The notes below the pieces were generated by a model. That model saw only the letters and a list, made by a program, of their open reading frames with translations, was not told the origin of the DNA and did not search any database. A program made the translations under genes and the position numbers. Positions 9,291-34,404 of a stretch of DNA of 64,000 bases are shown here, piece by piece; position 1 is the stretch's first letter, and each line of letters opens with the position of its first letter. The stretch lies in assembly GCF_947568905.1 (NCBI RefSeq), contig NC_079171.1, positions 31,062,001 to 31,126,000 on the forward strand, written 5' to 3'. The DNA is from Ostrea edulis. Its lineage: Eukaryota.

Positions 9291-10412
9291 GCTGTGGGAT
9301 ATTCTAAACGAATATTGAGTTCATTATAAAGATCACATGTCGCGGTATAGGAAGCTTATCAATGATATCCCAACTGCCTATTTTGTATTGTTTATATGAG
9401 TTATGAGATTGGTCACTGTTCGTTATCTTCACCTTTCATCCATAGCCTTCATATAGTCTAATCGATTGTTTCTGTCCTTAAAACCACGTTCCCTCCGCAT
9501 AAACTACCTATCTCTTATCACAACATAGTTCAGTATAGACTTAAGACAAGTATTTGGATGTCTTAAGATTTTTAACAATCTTAAGATATGACAGTTAAAT
9601 TGTGAAACAGCTAGAATGGATATTATGACTAATTTTGGTCTTAAGACAGATCTTAGTCGTAAGATAGTTTTGTTACACTGGCCCCAGGACATTGCACCTC
9701 ATGGGTTTGAAAATGAATTATTATGCACTAAATGCACTGGAAGTGAATGTGACTTCATTGTTGGCTAGTGAAGGTTGTTGTCAAACAAACCACATGTACA
9801 ATGGATCATTGGCTGCGTGAGTCGGTATTTACTTACGATGCTCTGTATGGTACTCTGTAATGTACATGTAATCTAACTGATTGTCGTAATCTCTTAATAT
9901 ACGGCCTCTTCAGATTCTCCTCTCTTGCACACACAGATAGGCGACAACCACATTTATGCACACACAAAGTTAAGATATATTTTAAGTTTATCTTAGGACG
10001 GGTTTGGTGATGTCTTAACTTTAGGAGAAACCTTAAGGATATAATTATCTTAGGTTAGGACAGAGTGGATAGTCAAACTTAGGACTAAGATACATCTAAG
10101 TTTATCTTAAGATGTATCTTGTCCTAAGATGGCTTCCATACCATGCCTACTGCTCATTTTGAAAATAAATATATTTACGTCATCAATGAGACAGGTAATA
10201 TTTTCATAAAATTCTGAGAGGGGGAGGGGTTTGGTTGTTAAATATATTCATACAATGTACATTTGAAATATCAAACTTAATGGTTGAGCAGCTGTATATT
10301 TTACTTGATAAGTGTAATTTCACCTTATCAGTTATTTTAACTTGTCAACACCTCTAACTAAGATTCCCTTTTTCATTGGCAGTGAACACTTCGTGTGACT
10401 CCGGCATCAGGA

Positions 10413-12134
10413 ATGCATCCCTGGCGTTGTGCTCAGGAAGTCATCCAGTGTTACCTCTGTGAAACTGTCCCCATACAGGGTCGCTGTGAACTTTGTCGTA
10501 AAAATCTATGTGAAGCCTGTGCTGAGAAGCATGTTTCGGATTCTTCTAAAATACACAATGTCGTGTCCTATTTACGCAGGAAATTTACTCCAAAATGTCC
10601 AGACCACCCAGAAAAACACTGCGAACTTCACTGCAAAACATGTGACGTTAATGTCTGTTCTTTCTGCATATCATCTGGTAAACACGAAGGACACACACAA
10701 TCAGATATTCTGGAAAATTTCAGCTCTGAAACAAGGAATTTACAAAAAGATTTGGAAGAATTGGAGACCAAAATTTATCCCAGATATAAAGACATGGCCT
10801 CCGATATCCAAACAGAGAAATCCGAGTTTGAAACGAATTACTGGAAACTAACAACAGCTGCCGACCAACAAGGAGAAGTCTGGTACCAAGAGATCACCGC
10901 CATTGTCAACCAGCGGAAATCTCACATTGAGGAGATGAAAAACAAACACCTATCTACCTTGGATAAAAATACAGAAGAAATTACACAGAAAATCACTGAA
11001 CTCAAACAGATCATTTCCGACTTGAAATCAATACTAGAATCATATGACGTCTCATTAGCCTCTACTTACAAATCTAGGAATTCCGAATTTAGAAAATTAC
11101 CGCCAAAAGTCCGAGTTACATTACCGAATTTTTCTCCTCAGAAAATAAACAAAGATCAGGTCAATGAAATGTTTGGTTCTCTGTCACCACTATCCATTAA
11201 CACAGAACATAGCGACATAATAAAGTCACCAGAAGCTGTATCCTCTCCACCATTCAAACTATTGAAGTCACCAGAAGCTTTATCGTTTTCCCTAGTCAAA
11301 CCACTTCTTGATGAACCGCGACTTACCGCCACCATACACACTGGGTACCAGAATCTATTCAGTGTTAGCTGTCTCAATGAAAAAGTCTGGACACGTGGGA
11401 ATGACACGATTCTGAAGCTCCTCAACCTCAAGAGTAAACTCCTGACATCAATGCAAACCAAGTCAGGGAATGATCCAGGGGACATTGCAGTGACACGGGA
11501 CGGAGATCTTCTTTATACTGACTACAGAAATAAGACTGTAAACCTAGTGAAGAATAAACAGATACAGATAGTTATCAGATTACAAAGGGGGTTGATACCT
11601 TTTAAACTACAGGGATGGAGGCCTCTCAATGTCTGCATTACCTCCTCCGATGATCTCCTGGTTACCATGATTAGTGATGATGAAACACAATCCAAAGCTG
11701 TCCGTTACTCTGGCTCCACAGAAAAACAAACAATTCAGTTTGATGATCAGGGTCGTCCTCTCTATTCAACTGGTAATTTCAGTAAATACATCAGGGAGAA
11801 CAGGAACCTGGATATATGTGTGGCTGATTGGGGAGCTAGTGCAGTAGTGGTGGTCAATCAGTCTGGAAAATTTCGATTTAAATACACTGGTCATCCATCG
11901 GATACCAAGAAATCATTTTATCCACGCGGCATCATTACAGACAGCCAGAGTCACATCCTGACATCAGACTTTGTCAATCACCGTATCCACATCCTAGATC
12001 AGGACGGACAGTTCCTCCGTTACATTGACAACTGTGATTTACGCGATCCATGGGGTTTATGTGTGGACATCAGAGATAACCTCTTTGTGGCTGAGCGTGA
12101 CACTGCTAAAGTGAAGAAAATCCAATACCTATAA
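10413..12134 (+). CDS. B-box/B-box/coiled-coil/NHL-type beta-propeller protein (RING-less TRIM2/3/71-like), 573 aa, single coding exon
   Basis: B-box CYLCETVPIQGRCELCRKNLCEACAEKH, second B-box CPDHPEKHCELHCKTCDVNVCSFCISSGKHEGH, coiled coil, C-terminal NHL-like repeats (PRGIITDSQSHILTSD...RIHILDQDGQFL, PWGLCVDIRDNLFVAE). The first ATG after acceptor ttcattggcag (10382) is 10413, the same position as the paralog's ATG. Confidence 0.9.
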   Translation: MHPWRCAQEVIQCYLCETVPIQGRCELCRKNLCEACAEKHVSDSSKIHNVVSYLRRKFTPKCPDHPEKHCELHCKTCDVNVCSFCISSGKHEGHTQSDILENFSSETRNLQKDLEELETKIYPRYKDMASDIQTEKSEFETNYWKLTTAADQQGEVWYQEITAIVNQRKSHIEEMKNKHLSTLDKNTEEITQKITELKQIISDLKSILESYDVSLASTYKSRNSEFRKLPPKVRVTLPNFSPQKINKDQVNEMFGSLSPLSINTEHSDIIKSPEAVSSPPFKLLKSPEALSFSLVKPLLDEPRLTATIHTGYQNLFSVSCLNEKVWTRGNDTILKLLNLKSKLLTSMQTKSGNDPGDIAVTRDGDLLYTDYRNKTVNLVKNKQIQIVIRLQRGLIPFKLQGWRPLNVCITSSDDLLVTMISDDETQSKAVRYSGSTEKQTIQFDDQGRPLYSTGNFSKYIRENRNLDICVADWGASAVVVVNQSGKFRFKYTGHPSDTKKSFYPRGIITDSQSHILTSDFVNHRIHILDQDGQFLRYIDNCDLRDPWGLCVDIRDNLFVAERDTAKVKKIQYL

Positions 12135-12973: not shown

Positions 12974-13250
12974 GTCGTGGTGGTCTAGAGGTTAGAGCGT
13001 TCGCCCACATATGCGGAAAGCCTGGGTTGGAATCCCGGCCGCGACAAACCTAAGACGTTAAAGCACATCGCCAAACGCTCGGCAGCAGGTGTGAATGCCA
13101 CGGGTCCTCGGGGACGCTACAGAACCTTTACTGTTGAATGGTCGTAAGCACCGAGCAACGCCCTGAATTTGAAACCATTCGCCGGTCTTGGTGACGTCTC
13201 CACATGAGTGAAAAATTCTCGAGAGGGACGTAAAACAAGATACAATCAAT
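12974..13250 (+). mobile_element. tRNA-derived SINE, related subfamily with internal deletion
   Basis: GTGGTCTAGAGG A box, GGTTGGAATCCC B box, shared tail ATGAGTGAAAAATTCTCGAGAGGGACGTAAAAC and (CAAT)n end. Confidence 0.7.
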
Positions 13251-16767: not shown

Positions 16768-18177
16768 ATGCACCCACGGCGCAGTGCCCAGGAAATCCTA
16801 CTATGTGACCTCTGTGAAACTGTCCCCATACAGAGTCACTGTGAACTTTGTCATATTAACTTATGCAAGGCCTGTGTTGGGGAGCACCTCTCGGATTCGT
16901 CTGAAAGACACAAAGTTGTACCCTATAAACACAGAAAGTCTACTCCTATCTACCCGAAATGTCCTGATCATGCCGAAAAACGCTGTGAACTTCACTGCGA
17001 GGAATGTGATATTCCTGTCTGTTCTACCTGCGTTACCTCAGGTAAACACAAAGGTCACGAAATATCAGATGTTCTGGAAAAAATCAATTTAAAAACACAA
17101 AGTTTAAAAACAGATTTGGAAGAACTAGAGACCAGAATTTATCCTCGATATGACGAAATGGTTTCCGATGTCCAAATTGAGATAGCTGAGTTAAAAACGA
17201 ATTATGGAAAACTGACAACAGCTGCCGACCAACAAGGAGAAGTCTGGCACCGAGAGATCACCGCCATTGTAAACCAGCGGAAATCTGACATTCAGGAGAT
17301 GAAAAACAAACATTTGGCTGCGCTGAATAAAAACACAGAAGAAATCAAACGGAAAACATTTGAACTAAAACAGATCATTTCCGACTTGAAATCAATACTA
17401 GAATCAAATGACGTCTTCTTAACCTCTACTTACAAAGCCAGGAATTCCGAATTTAGAACATTACCTCCTAAAGTCCAAGCAACATTACCAAGTTTTTATG
17501 CTCAGAAAATAAACAAAGATCAGCTCAATGAAATGTTTGGCTCTCTGTCATCATTATCCATCAACAGAGAAAAACGCGGCTACACAATACCAAAATCATT
17601 GCTTGATGAACCTCGACTCACCGCAACTATAGACACTGGATATACACACCTATACAGTGTCAGCTGTCTGAGTGAAGAACAAGTCTGGACACGTGGGGAT
17701 AAAACAATCATGAAGCTTCTCGATCTCAAAGGTAAAATACTGAAATCAATCCAAACCGAGTTAGGATATATACCACAGGACATATCAGTGACACGAGATG
17801 GAAATCTTGTTTATACCGACACTGATGAAAACACTGTAAACCTAGTGAAGAATAAACAGATACAGACCGTGATAAGACTACAGGGATGGATGCCTTGCTT
17901 TATCTGCTGTACCTCATCTGATGATCTCCTGGTCACCATGATCAGTGATGATGAAACGCAATCCAAAGTTGTCCGTTACTCTGGCTCCACAGAGACACAA
18001 ACCATTCAATTTGATAATCAGGGTCAACCTCTCATAATGCAGATTCAAGTTTGTTCAAATCATGGGCTCCAGGGGTTGGATGGGGCCACAATAGGGGATC
18101 AAAGTTTTACATACAAATATATAGGAAAAATCTTCTTCTCAAGAACCACTGAGCCAGAAAAGCTGATTTTTACATGA
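16768..18177 (+). pseudogene. TRIM-like paralog 2 (B-box/B-box/CC/partial NHL), truncated, with a satellite-derived C-terminus; open for 469 aa
   Basis: Collinear with paralog 1 up to QFDNQGQPL (18033). The ORF then reads into repeat DNA (IMQIQVCSNHG...KLIFT*). The remaining NHL repeats are not found downstream. Confidence 0.8.
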
Positions 18178-18650
18178 AACCTTTTTGACATAGTGCAGAT
18201 TCAAGTTTGTTCAAATCATGGCCTCTGGGGTAGGATGAGGCCACAAGGGGGATCAAAGTTTTACATACAAATATATAGTTAAAATCTTTTTCTCAATAAC
18301 CACTGAGTCAGAAAAGCTGATATTTACAAGAAAACTTTCTGACATAGTGAAGATTCAAGTTTGTTCAAATCATGGCCCCTGGGGGGTAGGATGGGGCCAC
18401 AGGTGGGGGGGGGTCAAAGTTTTACATACAAATATAGGAAAAAGCTTTAAAAATCTTCTTCTCAAGAACCATTGGGCCAAAGAAGTTGACATTTACATGA
18501 AAGCTTTCTGACATAGTGTAGATTCAAGTTTGCAAAGGGTAGTTTGGGCCATAATAGGGACTAAGGTTTTACATGCAAATATATATGGAAAGTCTTCAGA
18601 TATGGGCCAAAGTGACTCAGGTGAGCGATGTGGCCAATGGGCCTCTTGTT
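18034..18650 (-). mobile_element. Non-autonomous Helitron/Helentron-like element with ~165-bp satellite array (about 3 units)
   Basis: Repeating GCAGATTCAAGTTTGTTCAAATCATGG...GGGCCACA...GATCAAAGTTTTACATACAAATAT...TCTCAAGAACCACTGAG. End ...GTGAGCGATGTGGCCAATGGGCCTCTTGTTT. Resembles the oyster Cg170/HindIII satellite-carrying elements (from memory). Confidence 0.75.
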
Positions 18651-20794: not shown

Positions 20795-22264
20795 ATAACA
20801 CTCAGATGTTGATATTTCTACAAAAGTATAGCATACTACATAGGAAAAAGTGTCACATATGATCCTCATATGAAGTGAGTTTCATATGAGGATCATATGC
20901 AAGTCATATGTGTATCATATGAAACTCACTTCATATGAGAATCATATGTGACAAACATATGATTCTCATATGTAGAAAATAATATGAATTTCATATGAAT
21001 TGATTTTCATATGATTATCACATGGTATAAATTTCATATGAAAATCACATGATTTTCTCATATAAAATAAATTAATGTGTACCATATATGAATTTTTAAA
21101 AAATAGTATGTCTTCTCTGACAGAGCAAAGTATACCGATAACGTAAATTCTCGCATATTTGAGGGTTTGAGAAAAAACACTGGTTGATTGCTCATTTTAT
21201 GAAAAATGTACAATATTGGTTTAAAATCTTAATGTTGGGAAGGACACAAGTTTTTGAATATCTGCTTTCTAAATCAAAAGTTAACAAGCAAAATTTTGTC
21301 AAGTTATTCAATATATTTTAAGAAATATGTAAAATTTTAACCTTATTTAATCCAGAAAAGGGATTGATCAAAAATGAGAATTGCAACAAATGATAATTGT
21401 TCTTTAAAAAAAAAAGTTTTTTTCTGAACAAAGACAACAGAAATCATTTACTTTTAAAATTTAATTTTAGTGATGAATCCATAAATTAAAACATGTACAG
21501 CAGGAATCCATGATACATTAAAACATGTACAGCATATTCTTTACATAATCACACCATACAGCACATTTTTTTATGTTGGCATAAAAAAAGATCCCCCACT
21601 GGTCAATGAACACAAGTGTGGAGTATAGGTTTAAATATTATTTGCAGCCTTTCAACAGGGGTGGTCACATCCCAAACATGAGTGAAAAATTCTCAAAGGG
21701 ATGTAAAACAAAAGCAAACAAACATGTATACCTATTTCAAAAAATTCTCAGAGCATCAAGGGGATTGCTTGTGCAAGTACACTAAAAATACATACAAAGA
21801 AGATTTATATCAAAAATGACTTTGCACAAGCTGATGGTTTAGAAAAATCAAAACTAGATGGACATTTTAGTGAATATACATTGACTAGAAACAATCTGTA
21901 TCCCCTGGATAACTTGTGTTTAATAAACTTTGTATGCTTGAGTTCAGTCTCCTCTTGTTCAATCCTGGCTGGGGTTTTTCCTTCTTTGATGCTGCAATGG
22001 CACTGGATACAGTGATGAACAAGTGGCATGTAGGAAAGAACATTTGTAATAGGAATAACATCCAAATCCTCAGAGAACTTTATCACAGGACAACCAAGAT
22101 GTGTTGGTCGCTGTATAACCCCCTTTTCAACAATTGCTAATGAACTTCTCCTAGCACCCTGAAGAAAGAGTAGACCACCTTTGAAGATTCCAACTTTAAA
22201 CTGAAAGTGAAGAATATTAAAACATTTTATAATATCATATCATGATCAATGGTAACATACAATG

Positions 22265-23105
22265 TATCGTTCGTACAGAATTGCAGTCATCAAATTTCAT
22301 TACTTTTTCATGACCTCAACCCATTTTCAATGACCTCAAAGACAGACAACAGACTGATGAATAAGACACAAATATGAGGTCTTTCTTACCACATGAAAAC
22401 GACTTAGCAGTTGGACATATCAGGAAATATAATTTGAAAAAGTTTCTTCACATTTTCATTTGATTTGTACGAATTATACATTGTTACTGTATGTATAGTC
22501 CACAAAATGTGATTTAATGATGCTGTTTCTGAATAAACTGCACTATGGGGATAGAACAATCTAAGTTTTCTCCTCTTTAATGTCATTTTTTAAGATAGTA
22601 CTCAAATCTCGTTGATCCACTTCTCTCTGAAGTTTTACGTGTTTCGTTGAACATCAATGTGAAGTCAGTGCCCCCACCCCCATGTTTCCCATATCCACCA
22701 CCTTCAAGCACGTTGTGCAGAACGCTCTATCTATTTCTCTTAACAGCCCTGACCTACTCAAAATTGTGCTCCCACTCAGAAGAATAAACACATTTCCAAG
22801 GCACGACTCATCAGACTGCATACCGGTATATGTGCCATTACCTGTAGCACACTTGTTCATTCGCACCTAAATGCTCACAGTAATGGAAATTACTTTGTGT
22901 CAAGCCCTTTTATGATACAGATTATAACCAACATGGTTTTAGTAGTTCCGGATTAGGCGAAACAATATCCATTTATTTTAAAGGAGGAAAAAGTGAAATC
23001 CCATGGCTTTCCATGACCTAGCTCTCTCAAAATTCCCTTACTTTCTCAAGACCTAAAACCAAATTTCATGAGTGAGTTCAAATTCCATGACCCGTACGAA
23101 CCATG
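22265..23105 (-). mobile_element. Internally deleted hAT-like element with a transposase N-terminal remnant, nested in an intron of the CACTA transposase
   Basis: Ends related to CAGGGTTCGTAC (rc CATGGTTCGTACGGGTCATGG at 23105; ..CGTTCGTACAG at 22268). Minus strand reads KCVYSSEWEHNF/AFCTTCLKVVDMGNMGVGALTSH*CSTKH and ILWTIHTV..YNSYKSNENVKKLFQIIFPD/KSFSCG. Confidence 0.6.
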
Positions 23106-23980
23106 TACATGCATTACACTATAAGGTTTAGTATCTTTGTTCCAAACTTGAAGTAATTCATTGGTAACCGTTATAATACACTCATGAGGAACATATATAT
23201 CAAATAGCAATTGGAAATTAAGAGAGTGATTTTAAAAAGAATGCACCTCATCCTCTCTACTCAAATACATGATGGACATACCCTCAGCAATACTTGATCC
23301 ATCTTTACATCTACACATTTGGTAGCTGATCATCTTCCCTTCCAAACAGGGGGATGGGATCCCTAGGTCAATAAGACCCTGCAATAGGAGGCATTGGTGT
23401 TGGAATGCTGACATATCTTGCAGCTTTGTTTTGTTGTTGGCTGTACGAAGTGGTCTCAAAAGCAAAGGCTTCTCACAGTCTTGTTTGATTTCTGATAGAT
23501 TTCCTATATTAATGTAAAGAAAATTATGGATGCAAAGCTTTCAGTTTTGCTAAAGCATTACCAGTACTTGATTGTTTCAGGCCAAATAAACCTTCTTAAA
23601 ACATATTGAAATAGTTTTTGCTGTCAGATATCTAGAACATGTACTATATTATTCTACAAGAATATTCATAACATTCATGCATGCAAATAAATGTGTACAC
23701 ACTTGCAGACATTCCAAAACATCTCTGGATGTGACATAGTCTTACTATGATATTTTGCTGAGGTTCATATAAATAATAATATAATTCTTTACATAAATTT
23801 TCAAAAAGTCTAATTTCTTATAAACTAATTTGGTATTTATATAGAGTTAAATTGACATACCAAAAAAGTTGCACATTTCCTTCCTAGTGGATAAATCCTG
23901 CACCTCCTTTGTACACTGCCTCCTACAACATTGCAATTTCAGTATGAAAACGTGCTTACATCAGAAGCATACCTCATTCA

Positions 23981-24245
23981 AAAACAAGAGGCCCATGGGC
24001 CACATCGTTCACCTGAGTCACCTTGGCCCATATCTGAAGACTTTCCATAGATATTTGCATGTAAAACCTTAGTCATTAATATGGACCCAACTACCCCTGG
24101 AGGCCACTAATTTTGCATACTTGAATCTACACTACGTCAGAGAGCTTTCATGTAAATGTCAACTTCTTTGGCCCAATGGTTCTTGAGAAGAAGATTTTTA
24201 AAGATTTTCCCTATATTTGTATGTAAAACTCTGACCCCCCCCCCC
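23981..24245 (+). mobile_element. Helitron/Helentron-like fragment abutting the disrupted transposase exon
   Basis: AAAAACAAGAGGCCCATGGGCCACATCGTTCACCTGAG..., near-exact reverse complement of 18440-18650. Confidence 0.75.
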
Positions 24246-24686
24246 CCCCAGATATGAATATTAATTATCAAAGTCGTTTACTATATATTTTCATCAAAAT
24301 GTCTATCAAAAATGAATGATCTTTCCTTGCAAGAATGTAGTACCATAATACTTTCTTTACAGATTAATTCATCTATATGCTACTCACAAATTTTTTCAAA
24401 TCCTTCCCTTGTCTGCTGTTCACATTCTTGGTAATGTTAAATTTCACTCGCTGATGGGCATCTAGAGCAGTTAAATGGCTTTCAAGTGATGTTGCCTGAG
24501 TATCAGTTAATGAATCAATGCAGACTTTAAAAAGATGTTTTGATGTTCCAAGATGAAAAAGATGAAGAAGTCCAGATGGTACATCTCTATCAAATAAAAA
24601 CAAGTAAATATGGTAATCACTCGGATTTAAAAAAAAAAAAGAAGAAATTCTCATTTAAGCCTTTGGTTCGGGTGAGCTAATATTAA

Positions 24687-25636
24687 AGCTGTACTACCCG
24701 ATGTTCATGTATTTTTTTTGTACATAATTGCTTTAAAGCAGATTAATTTCTTTATAAAGTTATTAACTTTCCCTTAATTACATGCTTAAAAACATCTGCA
24801 TGTAAAAGAATACAGTGCGAATATTATTTAGAAAATAAATATAGTGGGTGCATATATAAATCATCCCATAATAGACGTCTATAAATAGAACCACCCGCAT
24901 CAGGGGAATCCCAACACGATGTATTAACTCAAACGCAACTGTCTAGTTTTAAGGCTGAAAGAGCGTAAAACAAGGAATTACTAGGAGGTATTTGATTTTT
25001 TTTTTCTATTAAAGTTATGGTGCGGTACTGTTATGTGGCGTCGGTGGCCGAGTGGTTAGGCTGTCAGACTTTTGACCGAAAGGTTCGAGTCCTGGTCGAG
25101 GCAGGGCTGACGTGTCCTTGGGAAAGGCAATTTACATGAATTTCCTCACTCCACCGAAGTGTAAAAGGGGTACCTGGCTATAGACAGTGAAAGATATTGT
25201 TAGAATGTTAGTGCTCTAGCGCTTGTAATGGCAGCTTGCACTGTATGCTTCCTAGGAGGCTGAGAAAGTTCTAGTTTGATATAAGGTCTGCCGGGGTAAT
25301 AATGTACATTACATTTGTAAAGCACCTTTGAGCGTACATAGTGTATGAAAAGGGTGCTATATAAATATGGTATTATTATTATAACAAAATACACAGTTTT
25401 ACACAGATAAGACCACCGATGATCTGAAAGTTTGAACTGGTAACATGACTGTCACTTGAAATGGCAGAGTACGTGACGCGGTTATTTGTATACATCGATT
25501 TAAAATCAAATAATTTGGGTTAAAACAGGTGAAATAATTTATGATATGTCGTACAGCCTCATAACTACATACGTGCGATGATTTAATAGCGCTTTTAGGA
25601 GATGGAAAAAAATATTGTAATTCGGACCATACAGCT
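24687..25636. mobile_element. TTAA-flanked Kolobok-like element in transposase intron 5
   Basis: TTAA|AGCTGTACTACCCG ... TTCGGACCATACAGCT|TTAA; carries a nested SINE. Confidence 0.65.
25037..25383 (+). mobile_element. CORE-SINE with L2-like tail
   Basis: GGTGGCCGAGTGG A box, GGTTCGAGTCC B box, CORE-like GTGTCCTTGGGAAAGGCAATTTAC...AAAGGGGTACCTG, tail TTGTAAAGCACCTTTGAG...GCTATATAAAT..(TAT)n. A tail fragment also lies at ~58615-58685 (minus). Confidence 0.75.
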
Positions 25637-26743
25637 TTAACAAAAGTGCTTCAAATATTCACCTTTACTATAACGTCAAATGATTTCCCTGGAACAGGTT
25701 ATAATTCATTTTCGGGGAAGGAGACAACTTTTCATCAAGTGTTCGCTTTACGAACTACGTACCTATGGGGATTAAGGATGTCCCAGAAAGGGTTGTCATA
25801 CTCCTTCACACCAAATGATGCCCAAGGGGATATGATTTCATGGAGGCGACTGCCGTCCCTTTGCTCACGTACAAGACCAGTTTTCCGTGGATACCTTAAT
25901 GAGAATAATTTAGGGTTAAATTACAATTAAGTCAAACCTCCTTATCTTGAACTCAACCGGACCAAAATTAAACTTAGAAATATGCGAGGATTCAAGAAAA
26001 CAAGGTAAAAAAAAAACATAACGGAAAAAGCGGTTGGGATTGCCAGTTCACATTGACACATGCATCCCTGATATCAGTTAGTGTTTGAGATAACAAAGAT
26101 CTGCATCAATTGTATATTACTGAAGTTCATAAAGTGGTGTGGCCTGTGACAGTAATAGACCTCAGTTATTTATGAACCACTTTCACTACATTTGGTTATA
26201 CTATGGTTTTACCTTTTCATTCTAATTATAAATAAGTGTTCATATTTATACATACCTGGCAATGTTCTTTGATATTGAAGGATTGCTCAAGTGGAGTTTG
26301 GCAATTTCAGTTGGTTTCAGAATGTATAAAGGTAAACCATTGTCATCTTCTCCCTGATATTACAATAAATCTGAATACAACTTTTTGGCAATGTAAATAA
26401 AATATCAATATTATAAAAAAAAAATTGAAATGTTAAGTTAAGGGTTGGGAATATGGTTATATTTCCTGACACCTTTCCTATGTAGGAAATATTGGGTAGA
26501 TTAAAGGTTTTTTTTTCAGCATCGAAATACTGTGTAATATATCAGTTGAATAAAATCAATAGATATATATTTCATAATGAGAAAAAAAAAACCAAATGTT
26601 TTATACTCATAAACATTTTTTATAACTGCAATCTATAAAAAAAAGTCTGAATCTGTCCTCAGCTACTCTTAAAATAAATTCCATATCCAACAACAAAACA
26701 CTGATTGGATCATCATGAATCCAAGTGTGATGAGTATGCATTT

Positions 26744-27318
26744 CAAGGGTAGATCCATGGGGGTGGGTGGAGGGGGAGGGGTCCAGACATCCGCTAAAGG
26801 GGGTCTTTAGCGGACCAAAAAATTTAATTTATTCAATTTCAACGAGACTTTTAGTAAAAATGATATGAAAGGTGGATACTTATATGCAATTACATTATTC
26901 AAATTTATCAACACCATGTAGTTTATCAGGATAAATGGGACGAAACACTGATACATGTGTATATATTTACGATATTTTATTTTCGTCAGATACAAGTATC
27001 ATTTAAAAATTCTTAAAAAGTATATATAATATAAAATATTTTACCGCAGAGATTCTGGGGGCCTATGCAGCCCCAGCCCCCCCCCCCCCCCTCCACCTAA
27101 TTGCAAGTAACCTTTAAACCAGCTCTTTTTTATCATTGAAAATCGGATGTGAATAAGTCCATAACAATGACTAGAATATGGGAAACAGGTAGTAAATTTA
27201 ATGTTAATATGTGCACAATCAAAAGGCGTAAATAGGGTGGGGGTGGAGATTGTGAAACACCTAAAAGATCAAGTGCTAGACCCCCCTCCCCCTTCACAAA
27301 TTTCTGGGTCCGCCTTTG
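26744..27318. mobile_element. MITE of the CAG(G/T)GGCGGATC family with 5-bp TSD, in transposase intron 3
   Basis: cattt|CAAGGGTAGATCCA ... TGGGTCCGCCTTTG|cattt. Confidence 0.7.
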
Positions 27319-28416
27319 CATTTTTACTCATACCAAATGAATGATGAATCTTACCTTAGCTATCAAGCTGTTTACATCCAAGTCCCCAAATTTCATGTTT
27401 CTGATATGATTTAACGATGGTACATTGGGAACACCAACTTCTTTTAAAATGAACCACACATACTTTGCCACTTCCAAACTCTTTTAAAGAAAACAAAATG
27501 GAATTGACAGGAATGACATTTTCAGATACTGTGGTTATACATTATTTTTACTGTTCAAAAACAAGTAGAGTTGGGGAATATCACTGATGCAAATTTCAGT
27601 ATCAATATAAGAATTACTGACTTGGTCATGTATCAAAGCACATTACTAAAACAAATATTTAATTAATTCAAATGTCATATAATCATACCTCCCACACACA
27701 CAAAAAAATGCATTTTCAGAGTTGATGATTAGGGAAATATTTGCGATCAGTTGTTCTAAACAAAGTATAATTCGATTCGATCTGTTTGTAATGAATGTGA
27801 AAATTCTAGTTTGTTTGGTTTTTTTAAATTTGGATTTTAATATGATTTACACATTTTACTTACAATGTGATGTGTTGTACTATGAAGCAATCCATATAAA
27901 AGAAGATTCAGCTTGTCTGGAAATGGATACCACTTGCTGTCATTTGTTTGGTCCTCGTATGTTTGGCTCTCAGAGTCACTACTGAAGCCTTCATTCTAAA
28001 AACAAAGTGTCAATATTTTCCTATCCTTTGTAAACATGAAACTAAACGGTCTAAAATTTGCACTCAACAACTTCTTGTAAATTAATAAAATTTCTAAATA
28101 ATGATACAGAATATTCAAAGTACAATACCAATAGATCATAATCCTCTGTCTCCGAGACGGGTTCAGTCTCCCCATCGGTATCCGAATCGTCATCGTTAAT
28201 TAACGTTGTGAAACTGTTTTCTAAAATTTCTGCGTCTCGTTGAAACGAACGCGAACTAAACTTCGTCGTATTGTCGAGATTTTCCTCCTTGTCACAACAG
28301 GTGTTCATCAGGCTTTTGAAGCTGTCATTTAATAGGTGTTTTCTTGTAAGATTGTGTCGATTTAAATGATTTATTTTGTCAAATGACACATCACAGACGT
28401 TGCAGCGAAAAGCCAT

Positions 28417-28559
28417 CGCGCCAACTGTCAGTGCCAAAATCAATGTTCAGAAAACGCTTTCACACCGTTTGCATTACTTGCCATCGGTTCAAGCGCGAAG
28501 TTAACCAAGCATATTTTAGCACGCGCTAGCAGACGATCAAAACATAAAGGTTCGGAAAG
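28417..28559. promoter_or_regulatory. Putative compact bidirectional promoter of the CACTA-like element
   Basis: Only 143 bp separate the two divergent ATGs (28416 minus, 28560 plus). Locally CpG-rich (CGCG at three positions). Confidence 0.55.
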
Positions 28560-31500
28560 ATGGAGAGAGACTACTTGGCAGTAAGTATCGCTAAATTTGT
28601 TTATATTCAATACACTGACCCATATCTATGAATAAAATGTTTAGATTTCAATGCAATACAAGTATCTATGCGTGTTTACTCAATGTCTAAGGGCAGTAAC
28701 TCGAACAAAGATGAGGAGTGGATCTAAGAACTGTCTGATATTTTGGTTTTATCATAAACAAACAGGAATCATAAATAAACAATTCGTTAACTTTTAATTG
28801 GCATTCAGTCATTAAGGTGCATATGGTATTTATTCACAGGACTCTCAAGATGACCTATTCGAAAACTCACAAGTGGGGCCTCTCCCAAATCTCTCAGATT
28901 CTCCACAATTAGCTCGAGTAGTTCCTGAATCACCCCCTGCTCCTCCCACTGTTGACATTCCTCCACAGGATAAAATTATGGCAGTGTTGTCAGAAATTTG
29001 TAAGGAACTTAATTTCTTTCTTTTTTTAATTATTGTAATGATTAACTTATTCAAAAGTATCAATTTATTCAAAAGTAATATATTATTTTTCAGTAAAAAT
29101 TGTTTATGTCTAAATATTAATGTTTTCTGGGGGGAATAAATAAATAAATAAGTGATTATAATATAATTGATGCTTGTTTGTTTGATACATATTTCTCCTA
29201 GAATTAGAATTAAAAGCACAGTTTGACCAAAATCAAAACCTTCATAAATAAGGAATATATTTAATGTTCTTTTAAGTGAAAGAACAGAAAAGGCTGACAG
29301 AGGAGGTTAACAAATTGAGAGGAGAGGTCCAAAGGATTAAGAACAAAGAAGCACTCTCAATGACCAAAGTGTCAGTAGAAGGGTCAACTATTGAGGTATG
29401 GTGTTTTATCATTTGTAATGAAAGTCATATAAGATTAACAGTTAATATGATCCATTTTATATTCCAACAGAAAGTGAATTAAATTAATTAAAACCTACGG
29501 TATGATGAAAACTTTTAATTTTAGTAAAAGCATTTATGAATCATTTATTTACAAAAGCCAATAACATTTTACTTACCTTATGCTAGTATAACTGCAGGCC
29601 AGTAATATATTTAATATAGCTCACCTGAACTGAAACCTCAAGTGAGCTTTTCTGATCAACCGTCCGTCCATCTGTCTAGCTTCCATGGCCCCTGGGGGTC
29701 GTATATGGGGTCACAATAGGAGATCAAAGTTTTATATTGAAATATATTGCAATTTTTTTTTAAAATCTTCTTTTCAAGATCCACTGGACCAGAAAAGATG
29801 AAACTCAGATATACAAGCTCTCTGAAGTAATGTAGTTTGTAAATTGTTCAAATCATGGTCCCTGGGGGTTGTATGGGGCCACAATAGGGACTTGTGATTT
29901 TTTACATCAAAATATATAGGAAAAAACCCTTTATAAATCTTCAAATCAAGAACACTGACCCAGAACAGATGAAAGCCTTGTGTGAAAAATTCCTGACATA
30001 GTGTAGCTTGTAAATTGATAAAATCATGGTCCCCGGAGGCAGGGTGCGGCCACAATAGGCAATTTAATTTTTAATTAGCAAAATACAGGGAGAATGTTAA
30101 AACTTCTCTCCTCAAGAGCTGCAAAGCCATGAAAACTTATATTTATGTGAAAGCCTCCACAGCTGGCATAAATTCAATGAAGTTTGTTGAAATCTTGAAC
30201 CCCAACGACAGGGTGGGGCCACAATAGATGATAAGAGTTTGACAATGGAATTTATTGGAAAGGGTTTTGAAAGCTAATTCTCAAGAATAGCAAAGCCATC
30301 ATTTATCATATTTACATGGAAGCATTAATTGTCAGGAAGTGTACATTCAATTGTGTTCAAATTATGGCCCCTGGGTTTTAAGGTGGTGCCACAAAATGCA
30401 ACAGTAAGCATTGTGGTTCATGGGCCTCTTATTTAAAGCCATCATATACCTGTTTTATTTTATATATGCTGTGAATTAATGAATTAATTGTATTTTCACA
30501 GAAGGAGTATATAAATTTCCTAAAAGTCAAATTCAGCGTATTTCCGTGGATCAATTTCCAAGATCAAGAAATACAGGTTTGTTAGTTGATATAATCCTGA
30601 TGAACAGTGAAAATTGTTAACTGGTTAAATACTTCAAAAGAGGTGCAAAAGTGTTCACCTTGCTAACAAAATTAAGAATGAGTACCTTAAATTGGGACAT
30701 ATTGTTTTTATTTCAAAAGTGAAAAGTACATTTTTTGCTGTAAGAGGCAACATTTCCAATTTCAATTATCAGTTCACCTGAGCCAAAGAGCTTTTCTGTT
30801 CGAAGGGTGTCTGGCATCCATCTGTCTGTTTGTCCGTTCGTCTGTAAACTTTTCACATTTTTCACTTCTTTTCAAGAACCACTGACCCATTTTTAACCAA
30901 ACTTGCCAACAAGCATCCTTGTGTGAAGTGGATTTCAGTTTCTTCAAATGAAGGACCATGCACCCTCTTCCAAGGGTTGATTTTTGTTGAATTAAAGAAA
31001 ATTGAATTGCATTTTTCATAACATCTACTCAAGAACCACCGGACCAGAAAAGATCAAACTTCTGTAAAAGCTTCAATACATTAGTGTAGATTCAAGTTGT
31101 TTAAATCATGATTCCCGGGGCTAAGGCAGGGTCACAATAGGCAAATAAAGTTTTATATAGGAATATAACGGAAAAATCTTTACATCTCTTCTTCTCAAGA
31201 AGTGCAAAGCCAAGATCATAAGTGGTCATGTAACATGTTCAAACATTTAATTTATACCTTTGATGTTTAAATAAATAAATCATTTAAGTATTATTTCACA
31301 CTGAAACATTATTCGGATGTAAATGCGTGTTGATAAATGATGTAATCTATCATAATGCCCTTTATGGGATTTTGATGATGTGACCAACTCATATTTTTAC
31401 ATCCCAATAAAAGTTTTGAAATGATACCTTATTTCGCAATAAAATACTTCTAAGAACTGGTGCAACCAAACTGCATCAGCCAAATTTTACAAAGGTTAAT

Positions 31501-32831
31501 GAAGCTATATTATATTGTTATGCCTGCACTGAGAAGCAAAGACATTGACAAATTAACCCCCGTATGTTGTTTTTATTTCAAAAACAGGTATGAATTTTCT
31601 AACTGTATGATAACATTTTTTAGGGAATGCTGAAGGACTTTACCAGTAAAGCAGGTTGGGCAGAAAGAAGTCATGTCCTGGGGGTTTTGTCGAGCTTTGG
31701 CTCGACAAAATTTACTTATTACAGGAACCAGACAAGAGCAAAGGTAATTAAGAAACCATGTGTAGTAAAAGGTGATGTCTTGATTTAATGTAAATGTATT
31801 TCATTACAAATTAAGACATAAAACAATGTTAAACGTTTTAATGTAAAGGAAACTTTTTTCAGTGGGGTGAACTATTAAATACACATAATTCATGGAAATA
31901 ATTTGATATTTGATTAATTGTATATTATGTTATTTGAAATATCTAGTTAACAGTATACATATGCTTGAAGTCATTATTCCTTTTTGTAGTTAATGGGCAA
32001 CAAGGAGATTGATGTGGAGGGACTTTCTTTAAAGTCCCTCCACAACTACCTGTGGAAGTGTTTTTTGCCACCAGCAATTCCACTTGTGGACATAGAGAGG
32101 GAACGCTTGACCTTATTGCTGGTAATTAATTTCATGCAATATTGTTTGTTTTACCATTTTCAACCACATTAGTTATACAGTATTTTTCAAAATGCTCTAT
32201 ATATTAAGATAAAGATTTCGTTTATACCACATTTGCCTAGCAATAATTTATAGATTCATAAATTTGATATGTGAAAGAAATATTTAATTCTCTTTCTCTT
32301 GCCTGCATGGGAATCAAATTTTTGTCTCATGTAAATTCAGAAATTAAAGTAGACTTTAAAAATTCTAAACACTTTCATTTTAATTGCAATGAGACTACAT
32401 TGTACTACAATCTGAAGTTTATTTATTTAAAAAAAAAAATAAGAAATGGAAATGGCATGCATTTACTCGTTGTCACATGTCGCGGTCAAAATGTACCATC
32501 CTCTCCCATTCTGGAAAGAGCTATGAGCGAACTCCAGATTTTGGCTTGAGACAATAGCATTTCCTTAGAAGGAAATCATTTCACTTTAGCATTGATTCAC
32601 TTAAAGGCATGCATAATACCTGAAACAATACTTGTACATGTTTATTTCTAATTTCCATAGAGATCTTTCTGCGCATCACAGAAATTGTTCCGTAAAGGAG
32701 GAACAAGTGGCTTTGCTTTTTGGGCTGAATTCCATAAGTTTGTGGACACCGTCAACAAGGATGGTAGACTGGACAAGTGGGAGAAATTGGAGGAAAAGGA
32801 GGAGAGAAGAATTGAGAAATATTTATCATAA
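28560..32831 (+). CDS. Intact 7-exon gene, 265-aa protein of unknown function (transposon accessory, TnpA-like by position)
   Basis: Exons 28560-28580, 28840-28999, 29277-29395, 30502-30576, 31624-31743, 31990-32121, 32661-32831. All GT-AG, phases compatible, 798 nt with no internal stop: MERDYLADSQDD...(P-rich)...ILKEQKRLTEEVNKLRGEVQRIK (coiled-coil-like)...FAFWAEFHKFVDTVNK...RIEKYLS*. Confidence 0.8.
29618..30432 (-). mobile_element. Helitron/Helentron-like satellite-bearing element in intron 3 of the accessory gene
   Basis: AGCTCACCTGAACTGAAA...GTGAGCTTTTCTGATC start, ~165-bp degenerate units, GTGGTTCATGGGCCTCTT end. Confidence 0.7.
30771..31230 (-). mobile_element. Helitron/Helentron-like element in intron 4 of the accessory gene
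   Basis: AGTTCACCTGAGCCAAAG...CTGTCTGTTTGTCCGTTCGTCTGTAAACTTTTCAC..., same family as 2205-2900. Confidence 0.6.
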
Positions 32832-34404
32832 CTTTTTAAATTAAGATTTTATAAATTCAAGTTATTGTTTATTGTATATTTGTGTATTTCTTCTTTAAAA
32901 TCATGTGCAGTTATTGATTTACTTGTTACTTTTAAATATGATATGTTTTTTATATGTGTATGAAAGGAACTGAAATTTAGCACAAAATATAAGTATCGAC
33001 AAGTGCTTTGTCTTCTTTTCGGTGAAAATTTCACTTTTTATAAATGTGAATCTTTCATTCTGATTTCAAAAGTTATGTAAATATGCACTGTCAAATCTTT
33101 TATTTCTGTTCATCGTTGAAGCCGTTCCATATCTATAAGATTGAGATATTTTAGAGAATATTGAGTAATCATTTTTTTGTACTTTGCATTGGTATTTAAT
33201 CAAGAAGTAGTTGTAGAATGAATAGAAATACTTGATTTCCAGCATCTGCATATCACATAATTAAAGTACACATACATGTCTCATATGATTTACATATGAG
33301 TTTCCTTACATATGATTCTCATATAACATATTAACACAGCATGCACACAAAACCTTCATATGTGAATCATATGAAGTCCCTTACATATGATATACATATG
33401 TGAATCATATGTAAATCATATGAAACACATCATATGATTCACATATGATGCCCTTTTTTTATGATTCTCATATGAAGCTAATCATATGATCCACATATGA
33501 AAATCATATGTGGATCATATGTGGCAAGCATGCCTGTGTATAATTTAAACCTTAGTCAACAAATGATATCCTATCCAGAATCCAAAGTCAGGGGCGCAAG
33601 CTGATTAGTAAGGGGTTCTAGGGGGCGCCATGAAGTTCCCTTAGAAGTTCTAGCTTTTACACGCAATGTTTACCTTGTTGCCCTGTTACCTCAAGGCCCC
33701 CCTGAGGGGGGGGGGGGGGAGGGGGAGGGGGTGAATAAGCTTCCAGAAGCTTATAAGCAGACCCTTTTTAGTAACAAGTTCCCCAATACGGGTTCTTTTT
33801 GATTCGGAAGATATCAAATTGTACATTTTTGCACTCCTTTTACTTTTTGAATTAAAAAAAAGTTCAATATGTTTTAAAACTTCTTATTATTTTTTATAAG
33901 ACTTGAATTTGCGATTTTATGTTGTTTTAACGATTGTACATATCGCTCACGTGATTATATAAATAATAAGATACGTTTACGACCTCTAGAATGATTTATT
34001 TATCATCTCCTTTTTCTCCTTTTTCTGTATTCGTTAGAAATATAGATACTTTTAAAATCCCATAATATAACTATTATTGACCTGTAAGTTATCTAAGAAA
34101 TAAAAATTTCTTGAAGAATGGTCAAATAACAGACTTTTGAAATTTATTCCTAATAAAACTTAAGTTTTATTTTTCACCAAGGCAAAGCATAATGAAATTC
34201 CATGAAAAAAATGGGTTGTTTTTTTTTCAAAATTTTCAATTATAAATCATTTCTTCTCACAAACGTCTTGGTCTCACTTTTTCTAATGATTTAAAATGGT
34301 TTGTGTATATCAATGGTATTGTAAACAGGGGCGGATCCAGGAATTGCGGTTACGGGGGCGCCACTTTATGAGGCAGGGGGTCTGGGCCGGGCCGCCCTGA
34401 GGCA

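What the first reader, a model, noticed from the sequence alone, without database searches (positions are those of the whole stretch)
20839..33538. 12.7-kb CACTA/EnSpm-like transposon with a head-to-head, fully spliced two-gene cargo
Seen: 35-bp imperfect TIRs (27/35), TA on both flanks, and 13 plus 16 palindromic CATATG subterminal repeats. Between them lie a transposase-like gene of at least 9 exons (minus) and a 7-exon gene (plus) whose ATGs are 143 bp apart. None of this is apparent from the ORF track because every exon is short. Established: CACTA/EnSpm elements have CAC-type termini, short TSDs, subterminal repeat arrays and a second, DNA-binding protein (TnpA). Inference: the transposase motifs (WYPF..K; W.LKE.GV.NVPSL; NP...YP; NP.....HRD.P..LH...LG..K; VHHC..C.C....R.EQE...H....N) resemble, from memory, a CACTA-related family I associate mainly with basidiomycete fungi rather than typical animal EnSpm. 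This could be a poorly described lineage with a divergent two-gene layout.
Basis: partly seen in the sequence, partly recalled or inferred. Interest (0 to 1): 0.85.

Follow-up and report, generated by a model that had tools for sequence, protein, structure and literature searches.

The report
Two-gene oyster transposon, core-deleted copy
This 12.7-kb stretch is a real cut-and-paste transposon of an oyster, from a little-described bivalve branch of the EnSpm/Plavaka/RAG1-like group that always carries a second, unknown gene, but this copy has lost the catalytic part of its transposase and could move only with help from an intact copy.

Summary
In detail: 27/35 terminal inverted repeats, TA on both flanks, and 13 + 16 CATATG repeats at the ends with only 2 in the 12.2-kb interior.

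The reading is mostly right.
- **Transposase family.** Relatives of the minus-strand gene (Crassostrea virginica, Mytilus, Argopecten, Pecten, the nemertean Lineus) reach Pfam Plavaka at about threshold. They carry D, D, C(2)C, H(3)H and E, and their modelled core matches only RAG1, RAG-like and Transib structures.
- **Ends.** Six element ends from four species align without gaps: TA|CAYAGSC, a spacer, then palindromic motifs 11 bp apart. The motif differs by lineage.
- **Second gene.** The 265-aa plus-strand gene is a conserved partner, not cargo. A homologous divergent gene of about 260-270 aa lies upstream of the transposase in other bivalves, and it evolves under purifying selection.

Corrections:
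- This copy lacks every catalytic exon yet keeps an open 530-aa frame, so it is not autonomous.
- The ends are not CACTA, and the duplication is 2 bp rather than 3.
- The family has roughly 15 copies in this genome.

No RNA evidence was available. The partner protein matches no Pfam family exon by exon, and its full length could not be searched.

The scan's earlier notes all lie on this same stretch, not on other DNA. Verdict: a new variant of a known kind, of moderate interest.

The parts
20837..20838 (.). TA flank on the left, a putative 2-bp target-site duplication
   Evidence: All six ends compared, from four species, are followed by TA.
20839..20873 (+). Terminal inverted repeat on the transposase side, starting CATAGG
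   Evidence: (I12). The C. virginica transposase-side end has the same CATAGG terminus.
20856..21051 (.). Left subterminal array: 13 CATATG plus 2 CACATG, mostly 11 bp apart
   Evidence: About 76% identical to the array in C. virginica L003.
21805..22200 (-). Transposase remnant, exon 9: C-terminal domain with the HHC..C.C.IKEG..EQE motif, then the stop codon
   Evidence: 52% identical to P0025 residues 556-680. Weak Pfam CxC5 hit, E = 0.056.
23247..23503 (-). Transposase remnant, exon 8
   Evidence: 64% identical to P0025 residues 481-555. Splice model.
23861..23915 (-). Transposase remnant, exon 7 (weakly supported)
   Evidence: 55% identical to P0025 residues 446-465, E = 0.24.
24388..24586 (-). 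Transposase remnant, exon 6 (HRDVPSGLLH..LG..KH..SRQGKD). This is the only part of the catalytic-domain region that is kept.
   Evidence: 70.6% identical to C. virginica P0002/P0025. Family profile E = 8e-25.
25763..25894 (-). Transposase remnant, exon 5. Just upstream (25813-25965) lies a decayed trace of the CNH..FCPKC region, with stop codons.
26256..26353 (-). Transposase remnant, exon 4. The 361-bp intron that follows stands where about 2 kb holding the exons for D1, D2 and C(2)C lies in C. virginica.
27355..27480 (-). Transposase remnant, exon 3 (W.ILKEVGVPNVPSL)
   Evidence: E = 2e-9.
27864..27981 (-). Transposase remnant, exon 2 (WYPF..K)
28205..28416 (-). Transposase remnant, exon 1, with a C2H2 zinc finger. 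ATG at 28416.
   Evidence: Pfam zinc-finger hits just below threshold. Family profile hit.
28417..28559 (.). 143-bp spacer between the two divergent start codons, a presumed two-way promoter
   Evidence: Read from the sequence. The promoter function is an inference.
28560..28580 (+). Partner gene, exon 1 (MERDYLA)
28840..28999 (+). Partner gene, exon 2 (acidic and proline-rich)
   Evidence: The DSQ..LF start is shared with C. virginica and Mytilus.
29277..29395 (+). Partner gene, exon 3 (charged helical stretch that looks like a coiled coil)
   Evidence: 41% identical to L003 1394-1495.
30502..30576 (+). Partner gene, exon 4
   Evidence: 54% identical to L003 791-874. This settles the choice of the 265-aa model.
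31624..31743 (+). Partner gene, exon 5, ending in the conserved F/W-RNQ-x-K/R-x-K motif
   Evidence: 65% identical to L003. The motif also occurs in Mytilus, Pecten and Argopecten.
31990..32121 (+). Partner gene, exon 6 (NYLWKCFLPP)
   Evidence: 70% identical to L003 242-373.
32661..32831 (+). Partner gene, exon 7 and stop codon (RSF..S.KLFRKGG..GF.FW.EF)
   Evidence: Mytilus, and Lineus more weakly.
33282..33521 (.). Right subterminal array: 16 CATATG, mostly 11 bp apart
33504..33538 (-). Terminal inverted repeat on the partner-gene side, starting CACAGG
   Evidence: Read depth drops here.
33539..33540 (.). TA flank on the right
29500..31300 (.). Very high-copy repeats nested in introns 3 and 4 of the partner gene. 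They are not part of the element proper.
   Evidence: Depth of 700-2400 against about 35 elsewhere. Similar to the 154-bp tandem repeat at 18033-18532.

Best explanation
The interval 20839-33538 is one copy of a cut-and-paste DNA transposon in an oyster genome.

**The lineage.** It belongs to a lineage of the CMC/CMCT clade (EnSpm, Mirage, Chapaev, Transib/RAG1, Plavaka, ESTA) that the searches here found only in bivalves and a nemertean. Elements of this lineage have four features:
- TA flanks;
- CAYAGSC termini;
- 200-450 bp subterminal arrays of a short palindromic motif spaced one helical turn (11 bp) apart;
- two genes transcribed away from each other out of a short central spacer.

One gene encodes a DDE transposase of about 950 aa with an N-terminal C2H2 zinc finger. 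The other encodes a protein of about 265 aa with no recognised domain.

**How it would move (inferred).** By analogy with En/Spm and RAG1/Transib, an intact transposase would bind the ends, with or without the partner protein bound as a dimer to the phased palindromes. It would then cut at CAYAG and reinsert at a TA.

**This copy.** The window copy cannot do this itself. Two internal losses removed the exons for both catalytic D residues, C(2)C, H(3)H and E. What remains is an open 530-aa frame with the zinc finger, the N-terminal region, one core segment and the C-terminal domain. The partner gene and both ends are intact. It is therefore a non-autonomous deletion derivative that could move only if a full-length relative supplies transposase in trans.

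**Shown:** the anatomy, the family relationship, the loss of the core, conservation of the partner gene, and multi-copy status.

**Inferred:** the binding partners, the cutting chemistry and any current mobility.
For: - **Ends, arrays and flanks:**
- **Multi-copy with a sharp boundary:** depth is about 35 inside the element and about 2 in the flank.
- **Relatives:** a single-exon search found C. virginica, Mytilus, Pecten, Argopecten and Lineus proteins.
- **Pfam Plavaka:** 32.7 and 32.0 bits against a cut-off of 26.3 in two relatives, and 23-26 bits in several more. Precomputed Plavaka hits are also listed.
- **Catalytic motifs:** the family alignment shows NIFIDD, IADY, FCPKC, THLxxHL and SEDxFEK.
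- **Fold:** the top 49 PDB matches of the modelled family core are all RAG1, amphioxus RAG-like or HzTransib chains.
- **Loss of the core:** no hit anywhere in the window to family profile positions 227-508 or 596-760. Four to six full-length relatives each give the same gaps.
- **Open frame:** 530 aa across nine GT-AG exons.
- **C. virginica element L003:** it has the same layout, a full core and a CATATG array ending ..CCTATG|TA. Only the exons and the ends align.
- **Selection:** pN/pS is about 0.26 for the partner gene and about 0.2 for transposase exon 6, with synonymous sites saturated.
- **Partner gene elsewhere:** divergent upstream genes of 271 aa (M. edulis) and 269 aa (A. irradians) are annotated. 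Profile hits are colinear on the expected strand in four further loci.
- **Shared end design:** six ends align without gaps.
Against: - No empty site was seen, so TA as a target duplication rests only on TA flanking 6 of 6 ends.
- No other copy from this same genome was retrieved. The copy number comes from one low-coverage run and covers 27700-33699 only.
- No RNA run holds the stretch, so transcription and splicing are not shown.
- Pfam support is borderline. P0025 gives no hit although P0002, a shorter protein of the same 90% cluster and the same C. virginica gene (LOC111113947), does. Some members lean weakly to Transposase_21 instead.
- The structural model is only moderate (pLDDT 61, TM about 0.45).
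- An open 530-aa frame after two deletions may hint at a function other than decay.
- Whether full-length helpers exist in this species is unknown.
Confidence: 0.8

Rival explanations
1. The element is autonomous, and the 9-exon minus-strand gene encodes a working transposase.
For: The frame is open across nine exons, and both ends and the partner gene are intact.
Against: All catalytic residues and the C(2)C and H(3)H motifs are absent. The introns where they should lie are only 361 and 472 bp long.
Confidence: 0.03
2. The core-less 530-aa protein is kept because it does something useful. It could bind the ends without cutting and so damp or regulate the family, as truncated P-element and Ac/En derivatives do. 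This would be a regulatory derivative rather than plain wreckage.
For: Both losses leave the frame open (about a 1-in-9 chance if they were random). The retained exons have no stop codons over 1.6 kb. The zinc finger and the C-terminal Cys/His domain are retained.
Against: There is no expression evidence. The losses fall in introns, as random deletions mostly would. No second copy of this short form was seen, and the copy may simply be young.
Confidence: 0.12
3. The locus is a domesticated host gene pair, in which the partner gene, or both genes, have been taken over by the oyster, and it is no longer a transposon.
For: The partner gene is intact while its introns are full of other repeats.
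Against: Both ends and their arrays are intact. The partner-gene region is present about 15 times rather than once. In C. virginica, Mytilus and Argopecten the same gene sits inside elements that have ends.
Confidence: 0.04
4. The two CATATG arrays belong to two unrelated insertions, and the interior is ordinary host DNA.
For: On their own, the outermost 17 nt of the two ends match at only 10 of 17 positions.
Against: The same end design sits next to the transposase gene in four other elements. In Mytilus L001 both genes are bracketed by the same motif arrays. Depth is uniform from the interior to the right end and then drops.
Confidence: 0.01

Closest known systems
Plavaka transposons (Pfam PF18759; fungi and red algae; PlavakaA/B of Kojima 2025, PMC12730594; Bostrychia preprint 10.1101/2025.02.11.637652)
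   Same: This is the best Pfam match for the relatives. Both have the DDE core with C(2)C and H(3)H, a 2-bp duplication like PlavakaA, and extra genes inside the element. Repeat arrays inside the element are also reported in red-algal Plavaka.
   Different: Only the last 40% of the Pfam model matches, and at about threshold. The termini are CAYAGS, not TGT..ACA or CATCA..TGATG. The host is an animal. The partner gene is not a TET/JBP gene or a PAG gene. Placement in a tree was not tested.
En/Spm (CACTA) of plants and the animal EnSpm families of Repbase, including EnSpm-1_CGi and EnSpm-2_CGi
   Same: Termini of the CA..TG type, subterminal arrays of a short binding motif, a second protein besides the transposase, and non-autonomous internal-deletion derivatives (like dSpm).
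   Different: The termini are not CACTA. The duplication is 2 bp (TA) rather than 3 bp. Transposase_21 scores only about 16 bits against a cut-off of 28.6. The second protein comes from a separate, divergently transcribed gene rather than from alternative splicing of one transcript. The motif is palindromic. Whether either Repbase oyster family is this lineage could not be checked.
ESTA (EnSpm-like elements with TA duplications, rust fungi) and Mirage (2-bp duplication)
   Same: TA or 2-bp flanks, membership of the same CMCT clade, and a resemblance to RAG1 reported for ESTA.
   Different: No sequence comparison with ESTA or Mirage transposases was possible here. The hosts differ, and ESTA elements carry TET/JBP genes.
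RAG1 / Transib / ProtoRAG
   Same: The modelled family core matches only these solved structures. The CACAG-type ends recall the CACAGTG heptamer. ProtoRAG is also a two-gene element.
   Different: Sequence identity is about 10%. The partner protein is far shorter than RAG2, and no sequence or structure comparison with RAG2 was made. The gene orientation differs, the duplication is TA rather than 5 bp, and these elements have long subterminal arrays.

Membership tests
CMC/CMCT clade of DDE transposons | [quoted passage not shown] | tested here: met
   Present in full-length relatives: NIFIDD, IADY, FCPKC, THLxxHL and SEDxFEK. In the window copy itself all of these are deleted.
CMC/CMCT clade of DDE transposons | Catalytic core with a RAG1/Transib-like fold | tested here: met
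   AlphaFold model of alignment A1 (pLDDT 61). The top 49 Foldseek PDB hits are all RAG1, BbRAGL or HzTransib, with E from 8e-5 to 0.09 and TM about 0.45 for the RAG1 matches, 0.30-0.42 for HzTransib. The model is of moderate quality.
CMC/CMCT clade of DDE transposons | 5'-CA..TG-3' termini | tested here: met
   CATAGG...CCTGTG in the window. CAYAGSC at all six ends compared.
CMC/CMCT clade of DDE transposons | Target-site duplication of 2-5 bp | tested here: inconclusive
   TA flanks 6 of 6 ends, and no longer repeat fits in the window. No empty site was available.
Plavaka | Match to Pfam PF18759 above the gathering score | tested here: inconclusive
   P0002 scores 32.7 and P0020 32.0, against a cut-off of 26.3. 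P0009/P0038 score 25.6-25.8 and P0014/P0039 23.3. P0006, P0021, P0022 and P0025 give none. Only model positions 188-325 match. The window's own exons give no hit.
Plavaka | Termini TGT..ACA (PlavakaA) or CATCA..TGATG (PlavakaB), as in PMC12730594 | tested here: not met
   The termini are CAYAGG/CAYAGC.
Plavaka | Branches with fungal Plavaka in a transposase tree | not tested
   No fungal, EnSpm, Mirage, Chapaev or ESTA sequences could be obtained. The word-indexed searches returned only bivalve and nemertean proteins.
EnSpm/CACTA in the strict sense | CACTA termini and a 3-bp duplication | tested here: not met
   The termini are CATAG/CACAG. The flanks share only TA.
EnSpm/CACTA in the strict sense | Transposase_21 (PF02992) above threshold | tested here: not met
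   16-17 bits against a cut-off of 28.6 in P0006, P0014 and P0039. One relative (P0043) carries a precomputed PF02992 label.
EnSpm/CACTA in the strict sense | Subterminal arrays of a short motif, and a second element-encoded protein | tested here: met
   Arrays. Second gene. Here, however, it is a separate divergent gene and the motif is palindromic.
ESTA | TA duplication together with an ESTA-type transposase | tested here: inconclusive
   The TA flanks are met. The relationship of the transposase to ESTA was not testable with the sequences at hand.

The most novel reading that the evidence does not exclude
The bivalve and nemertean elements form their own lineage of the RAG1/Transib-EnSpm-Plavaka clade, separate from the named lineages. 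On this reading the obligatory second gene encodes a new kind of transposition cofactor that binds, as a dimer, the helically phased palindromic arrays. The recognition motif would have been swapped repeatedly (TCATATGA, TTCACGTGAA, CCTGAAWTTCAGG) while its positions relative to the cut site stayed fixed.
Probability: 0.35. Interest if true: 0.65.

Novelty: new variant of a known kind. Interest (0 to 1): 0.5.

Why it matters
Plavaka-like transposases have been described in fungi and algae. No paper in the searched library describes them in bivalves, or in any other animal.

This lineage shows such elements in several bivalve orders and a nemertean, with two features that can be tested directly. 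The first is a conserved partner gene of unknown fold. The second is an end architecture in which the positions of the binding motifs are fixed but their sequence changes between host lineages, which offers a natural experiment on how a transposon and its DNA-binding protein co-evolve.

Because the catalytic core resembles RAG1 and Transib, a two-gene relative with an apparently intact copy in C. virginica could add a comparison point for how RAG-type recombinases use accessory proteins.

For genome annotation, it explains a set of 'uncharacterized protein' gene models in oysters, mussels and scallops.

The window copy itself is an ordinary non-autonomous derivative.

Tried and rejected
- **Pfam on single exons.** The minus-strand exons gave only sub-threshold zinc-finger and CxC5 hits. 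The partner-gene exons gave nothing credible.
- **Atlas look-alikes.** Two partner-gene exons gave no usable hit.
- **Profile of the family core against PDB sequences.** Nothing relevant. Only the fold search worked.
- **RNA evidence.**
  - No RNA run holds the stretch.
  - The two runs guessed to be RNA (X19, X20) gave contigs that cross introns and the spacer, so they look like DNA of a related species.
- **Exact look-ups.** P0001 and P0002 are not on record.
- **Search for same-species copies by protein.** A search with the 93-aa exon ORF found no candidate.
- **Metagenome scan with a degenerate end pattern.** It gave three hits, all chance matches without arrays.
- **tblastx of the partner gene against the Mytilus loci.** Nothing was found. 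Only a profile search on six-frame pieces showed the weak colinear similarity.
- **The 240-aa six-exon partner-gene model.** Rejected because exon 4 is conserved in C. virginica.
Rejected. Exon 5 matches a normal exon of the C. virginica gene, and the loss is of whole exons between exons 4 and 5 and between exons 6 and 7.
- The spliced 265-aa and 530-aa proteins have no reference in the tools and were not typed in. Full-length family, homology and structure searches on them were therefore not run.

Full report
**1. The observation**

- The left end 20839-20873 and the reverse complement of the right end 33504-33538 agree at 27 of 35 positions. The repeat finder lists the pair, with flanks, as I12.
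- TA lies directly outside both ends. No longer direct repeat fits.
- CATATG occurs 13 times in 20856-21040, 16 times in 33282-33521, twice in the 12.2-kb interior and 13 times in the remaining 51 kb. The window total is 44, against 25 +/- 5 in shuffles.
- The context of the motif is (T/A)CATATG(A/T). The commonest spacing is 11 bp, seen in 31 of 58 spacings when the homologous arrays of other species are pooled.

**2. Host and copy number**

The stretch is held by runs of one coded organism and by 'oyster metagenome' runs.

Raw DNA reads of another individual give a summed depth of about 30-40 from 27700 to 33499. The last bin, which holds 39 bp of element and 161 bp of flank, has a depth of 8.4. 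This implies a depth of about 2 in the flank. The right end is therefore a true repeat boundary, and the family has roughly 15 copies at 90% identity or more. This is a rough figure from one run at about 2x coverage.

Three patches inside the introns of the plus-strand gene reach depths of 700-2400. These are nested high-copy repeats.

**3. The minus-strand gene**

*Relatives.* Single exons have no Pfam family. An exhaustive search with the exon at 24376-24591 found 20 proteins. By their source names they come from Crassostrea virginica, Mytilus edulis and M. coruscus, Pecten maximus, Argopecten irradians, Magallana gigas and the nemertean Lineus longissimus.

*Family.*
- Two relatives pass the Pfam Plavaka cut-off (32.7 and 32.0 bits against 26.3). 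Several sit just below it, and a few lean weakly to the EnSpm family Transposase_21.
- The family alignment shows the CMC signature: NIFIDD, IADY, FCPKC, THLxxHL and SEDxFEK. [quoted passage not shown]
- A moderate AlphaFold model of the core (pLDDT 61) has the strand-and-helix order of an RNase H-like domain. Its top 49 PDB matches are all RAG1, amphioxus RAG-like or HzTransib chains.

**4. This copy lacks the catalytic core**

- Six full-length or long relatives, laid on the window, each match the same pieces and miss the same two blocks.
- A family profile searched against all six frames of the whole window finds nothing for positions 227-508 (D1, D2, C(2)C) or 596-760 (H(3)H, E).
- Against the closest relative, C. 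virginica P0025, residues 1-157 and 304-445 are absent, and 158-178 survive only as a decayed trace with stop codons at 25813-25965.
- In the C. virginica element these blocks occupy about 2 kb each. The window has introns of 361 and 472 bp in their place.
- Exon 5 corresponds to a normal exon of the C. virginica gene. The losses are therefore of whole exons, not a fusion inside an exon.
- The nine remaining exons, all with GT-AG introns, still give an uninterrupted 530-aa frame.

**5. The plus-strand gene**

*Model.* Chaining open exons with GT-AG sites from the ATG at 28560 to the stop codon at 32829-32831 gives a 265-aa, 7-exon model and a 240-aa alternative without exon 4.

*Support from C. 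virginica.* Locus L003 carries colinear homologous exons on the strand opposite its transposase. Exon 4 is 54% identical, exon 5 65%, exon 6 70% and the start of exon 7 68%. Exons 2 and 3 are weaker. This fixes the 265-aa model.

*Selection.* Between the two elements only the exons and the ends align. Synonymous sites are saturated (pS 0.74-0.87), while pN is 0.15-0.33. Both genes have therefore been under purifying selection.

*Other species.*
- Gene models of 271 aa (M. edulis) and 269 aa (A. irradians) lie head-to-head with the transposase gene.
- A two-sequence profile finds weak hits in Mytilus, Argopecten, Pecten and Lineus. Eight of the nine best lie upstream of the transposase gene on the opposite strand, in colinear order.
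- These hits share the motifs KEY..FLK.+FS..PW, F/W-RNQ-x-K-x-KV and RSF..S.KLFR.
- One Mytilus locus (L002) instead has a helicase gene model upstream.

*Function.* No Pfam family matches any exon. The protein has an acidic N-terminus, a charged helical stretch and a basic conserved C-terminal half. Its function is unknown. A role as an end-binding cofactor is an inference from its constant presence and from the palindromic arrays.

**6. The ends across species**

The transposase-side ends of C. virginica L003, M. edulis L001 and L002 and A. irradians L009, together with both window ends, align without gaps. The shared pattern is TA, then CAYAGSC, then about ten A/T-rich bases, then one motif copy at columns 19-25 and another at 30-36.

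The motif itself differs by lineage:
- TCATATGA in the two oysters;
- TTCACGTGAA or ACGTGA in mussels;
- CCTGAAWTTCAGG in the scallop.

In Mytilus L001 the same ACGTGA motif reappears beyond the end of the partner gene, so both genes are bracketed.

The arrays belong to the element, and the two-gene interior goes with them.

**7. What it is and how it most likely works**

It is a non-autonomous internal-deletion copy of a two-gene CMCT transposon.

By analogy with En/Spm and with RAG1/Transib, an intact transposase would bind the ends through its zinc finger, or be helped there by the partner protein. It would cut at the CAYAG ends and insert at TA.

This copy keeps everything needed in cis and could be moved in trans. 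Whether helpers exist in this species was not established. The open 530-aa frame allows a regulatory role for the short protein, but nothing tests that here.

**8. Comparison and novelty**

- Classical CACTA membership fails on the termini, the duplication length and the Pfam score.
- Plavaka membership is inconclusive: the Pfam score is borderline, the termini differ, and no tree was built.
- Clade-level CMCT membership is met.
- Repbase holds EnSpm-1_CGi and EnSpm-2_CGi for the Pacific oyster, both placed among animal EnSpm in Kojima's tree file. Whether either is this lineage could not be checked.
- The searched papers describe no bivalve or other animal Plavaka-like element: no listed title concerns one, and no listed paper combined Plavaka with a bivalve, mollusc or oyster term.

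I rate it a new variant of a known kind.

**9. Limits**

- There is no RNA evidence, no empty site and no second copy from the same genome.
- The oyster species was not identified.
- The spliced proteins have no reference in the tools and were not typed in. Full-length searches and folds of the partner protein and of the 530-aa product were therefore left out.
- The scan's earlier notes all lie on this same stretch of this window.

Noticed in passing
window 10395-12134 and 16768-18177: Two tandem intronless ORFs (579 and 469 aa) with a B-box zinc finger; the first also has NHL repeats. They look like TRIM-type genes. The second runs into the tandem repeat at 18033 and lacks the NHL end.
   Followed up: partly
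window 18033-18532, 23982-24246, 29600-30100, 30700-31300: A repeat of about 154 bp forms a 3-copy tandem array at 18033-18532. Related pieces are nested in the introns of both transposon genes. The pieces laid (within 29500-31300) reach read depths of 700-2400, so this is one of the most abundant repeats of this genome.
   Followed up: partly
window 12974-13046: Rfam tRNA match (35.4 bits, plus strand) between the two TRIM-like genes. It could be a tRNA gene or a tRNA-derived SINE head.
   Followed up: no
L002 31100-31537, L001 26100-26465 and 1-445, L009 25360-25836: The subterminal motif changes between host lineages (CACGTG or ACGTGA in mussels, CCTGAAWTTCAGG in the scallop, CATATG in oysters). 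The distance of the first two motif copies from the cut site and the 11-bp phasing stay the same.
   Followed up: partly
L002 2630-9905: In one Mytilus element the gene model lying head-to-head with the transposase is a 529-aa DEAD/Helicase_C protein rather than the protein of about 270 aa. This could be a merged annotation, a replaced partner or a neighbouring host gene.
   Followed up: no
L003 8067-9779 and 10001-14176: The C. virginica annotation splits one transposase into two genes (267 aa and 682 aa). Together they cover the full length of the family, with all catalytic motifs, so this copy looks potentially autonomous.
   Followed up: partly
window 27700-32900 (runs X19, X20): A second coded organism holds pieces 90-95% identical to both genes and the spacer, but nothing from 32900 to the right end. 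A related species seems to carry the same family, with diverged or unsampled ends.
   Followed up: no
P0025 versus P0002: The 682-aa protein gives no Pfam hit at E <= 1. The 413-aa P0002, from the same 90% cluster and the same C. virginica gene (LOC111113947), scores 32.7 bits on Plavaka. This shows how close the family is to the limit of that model.
   Followed up: no
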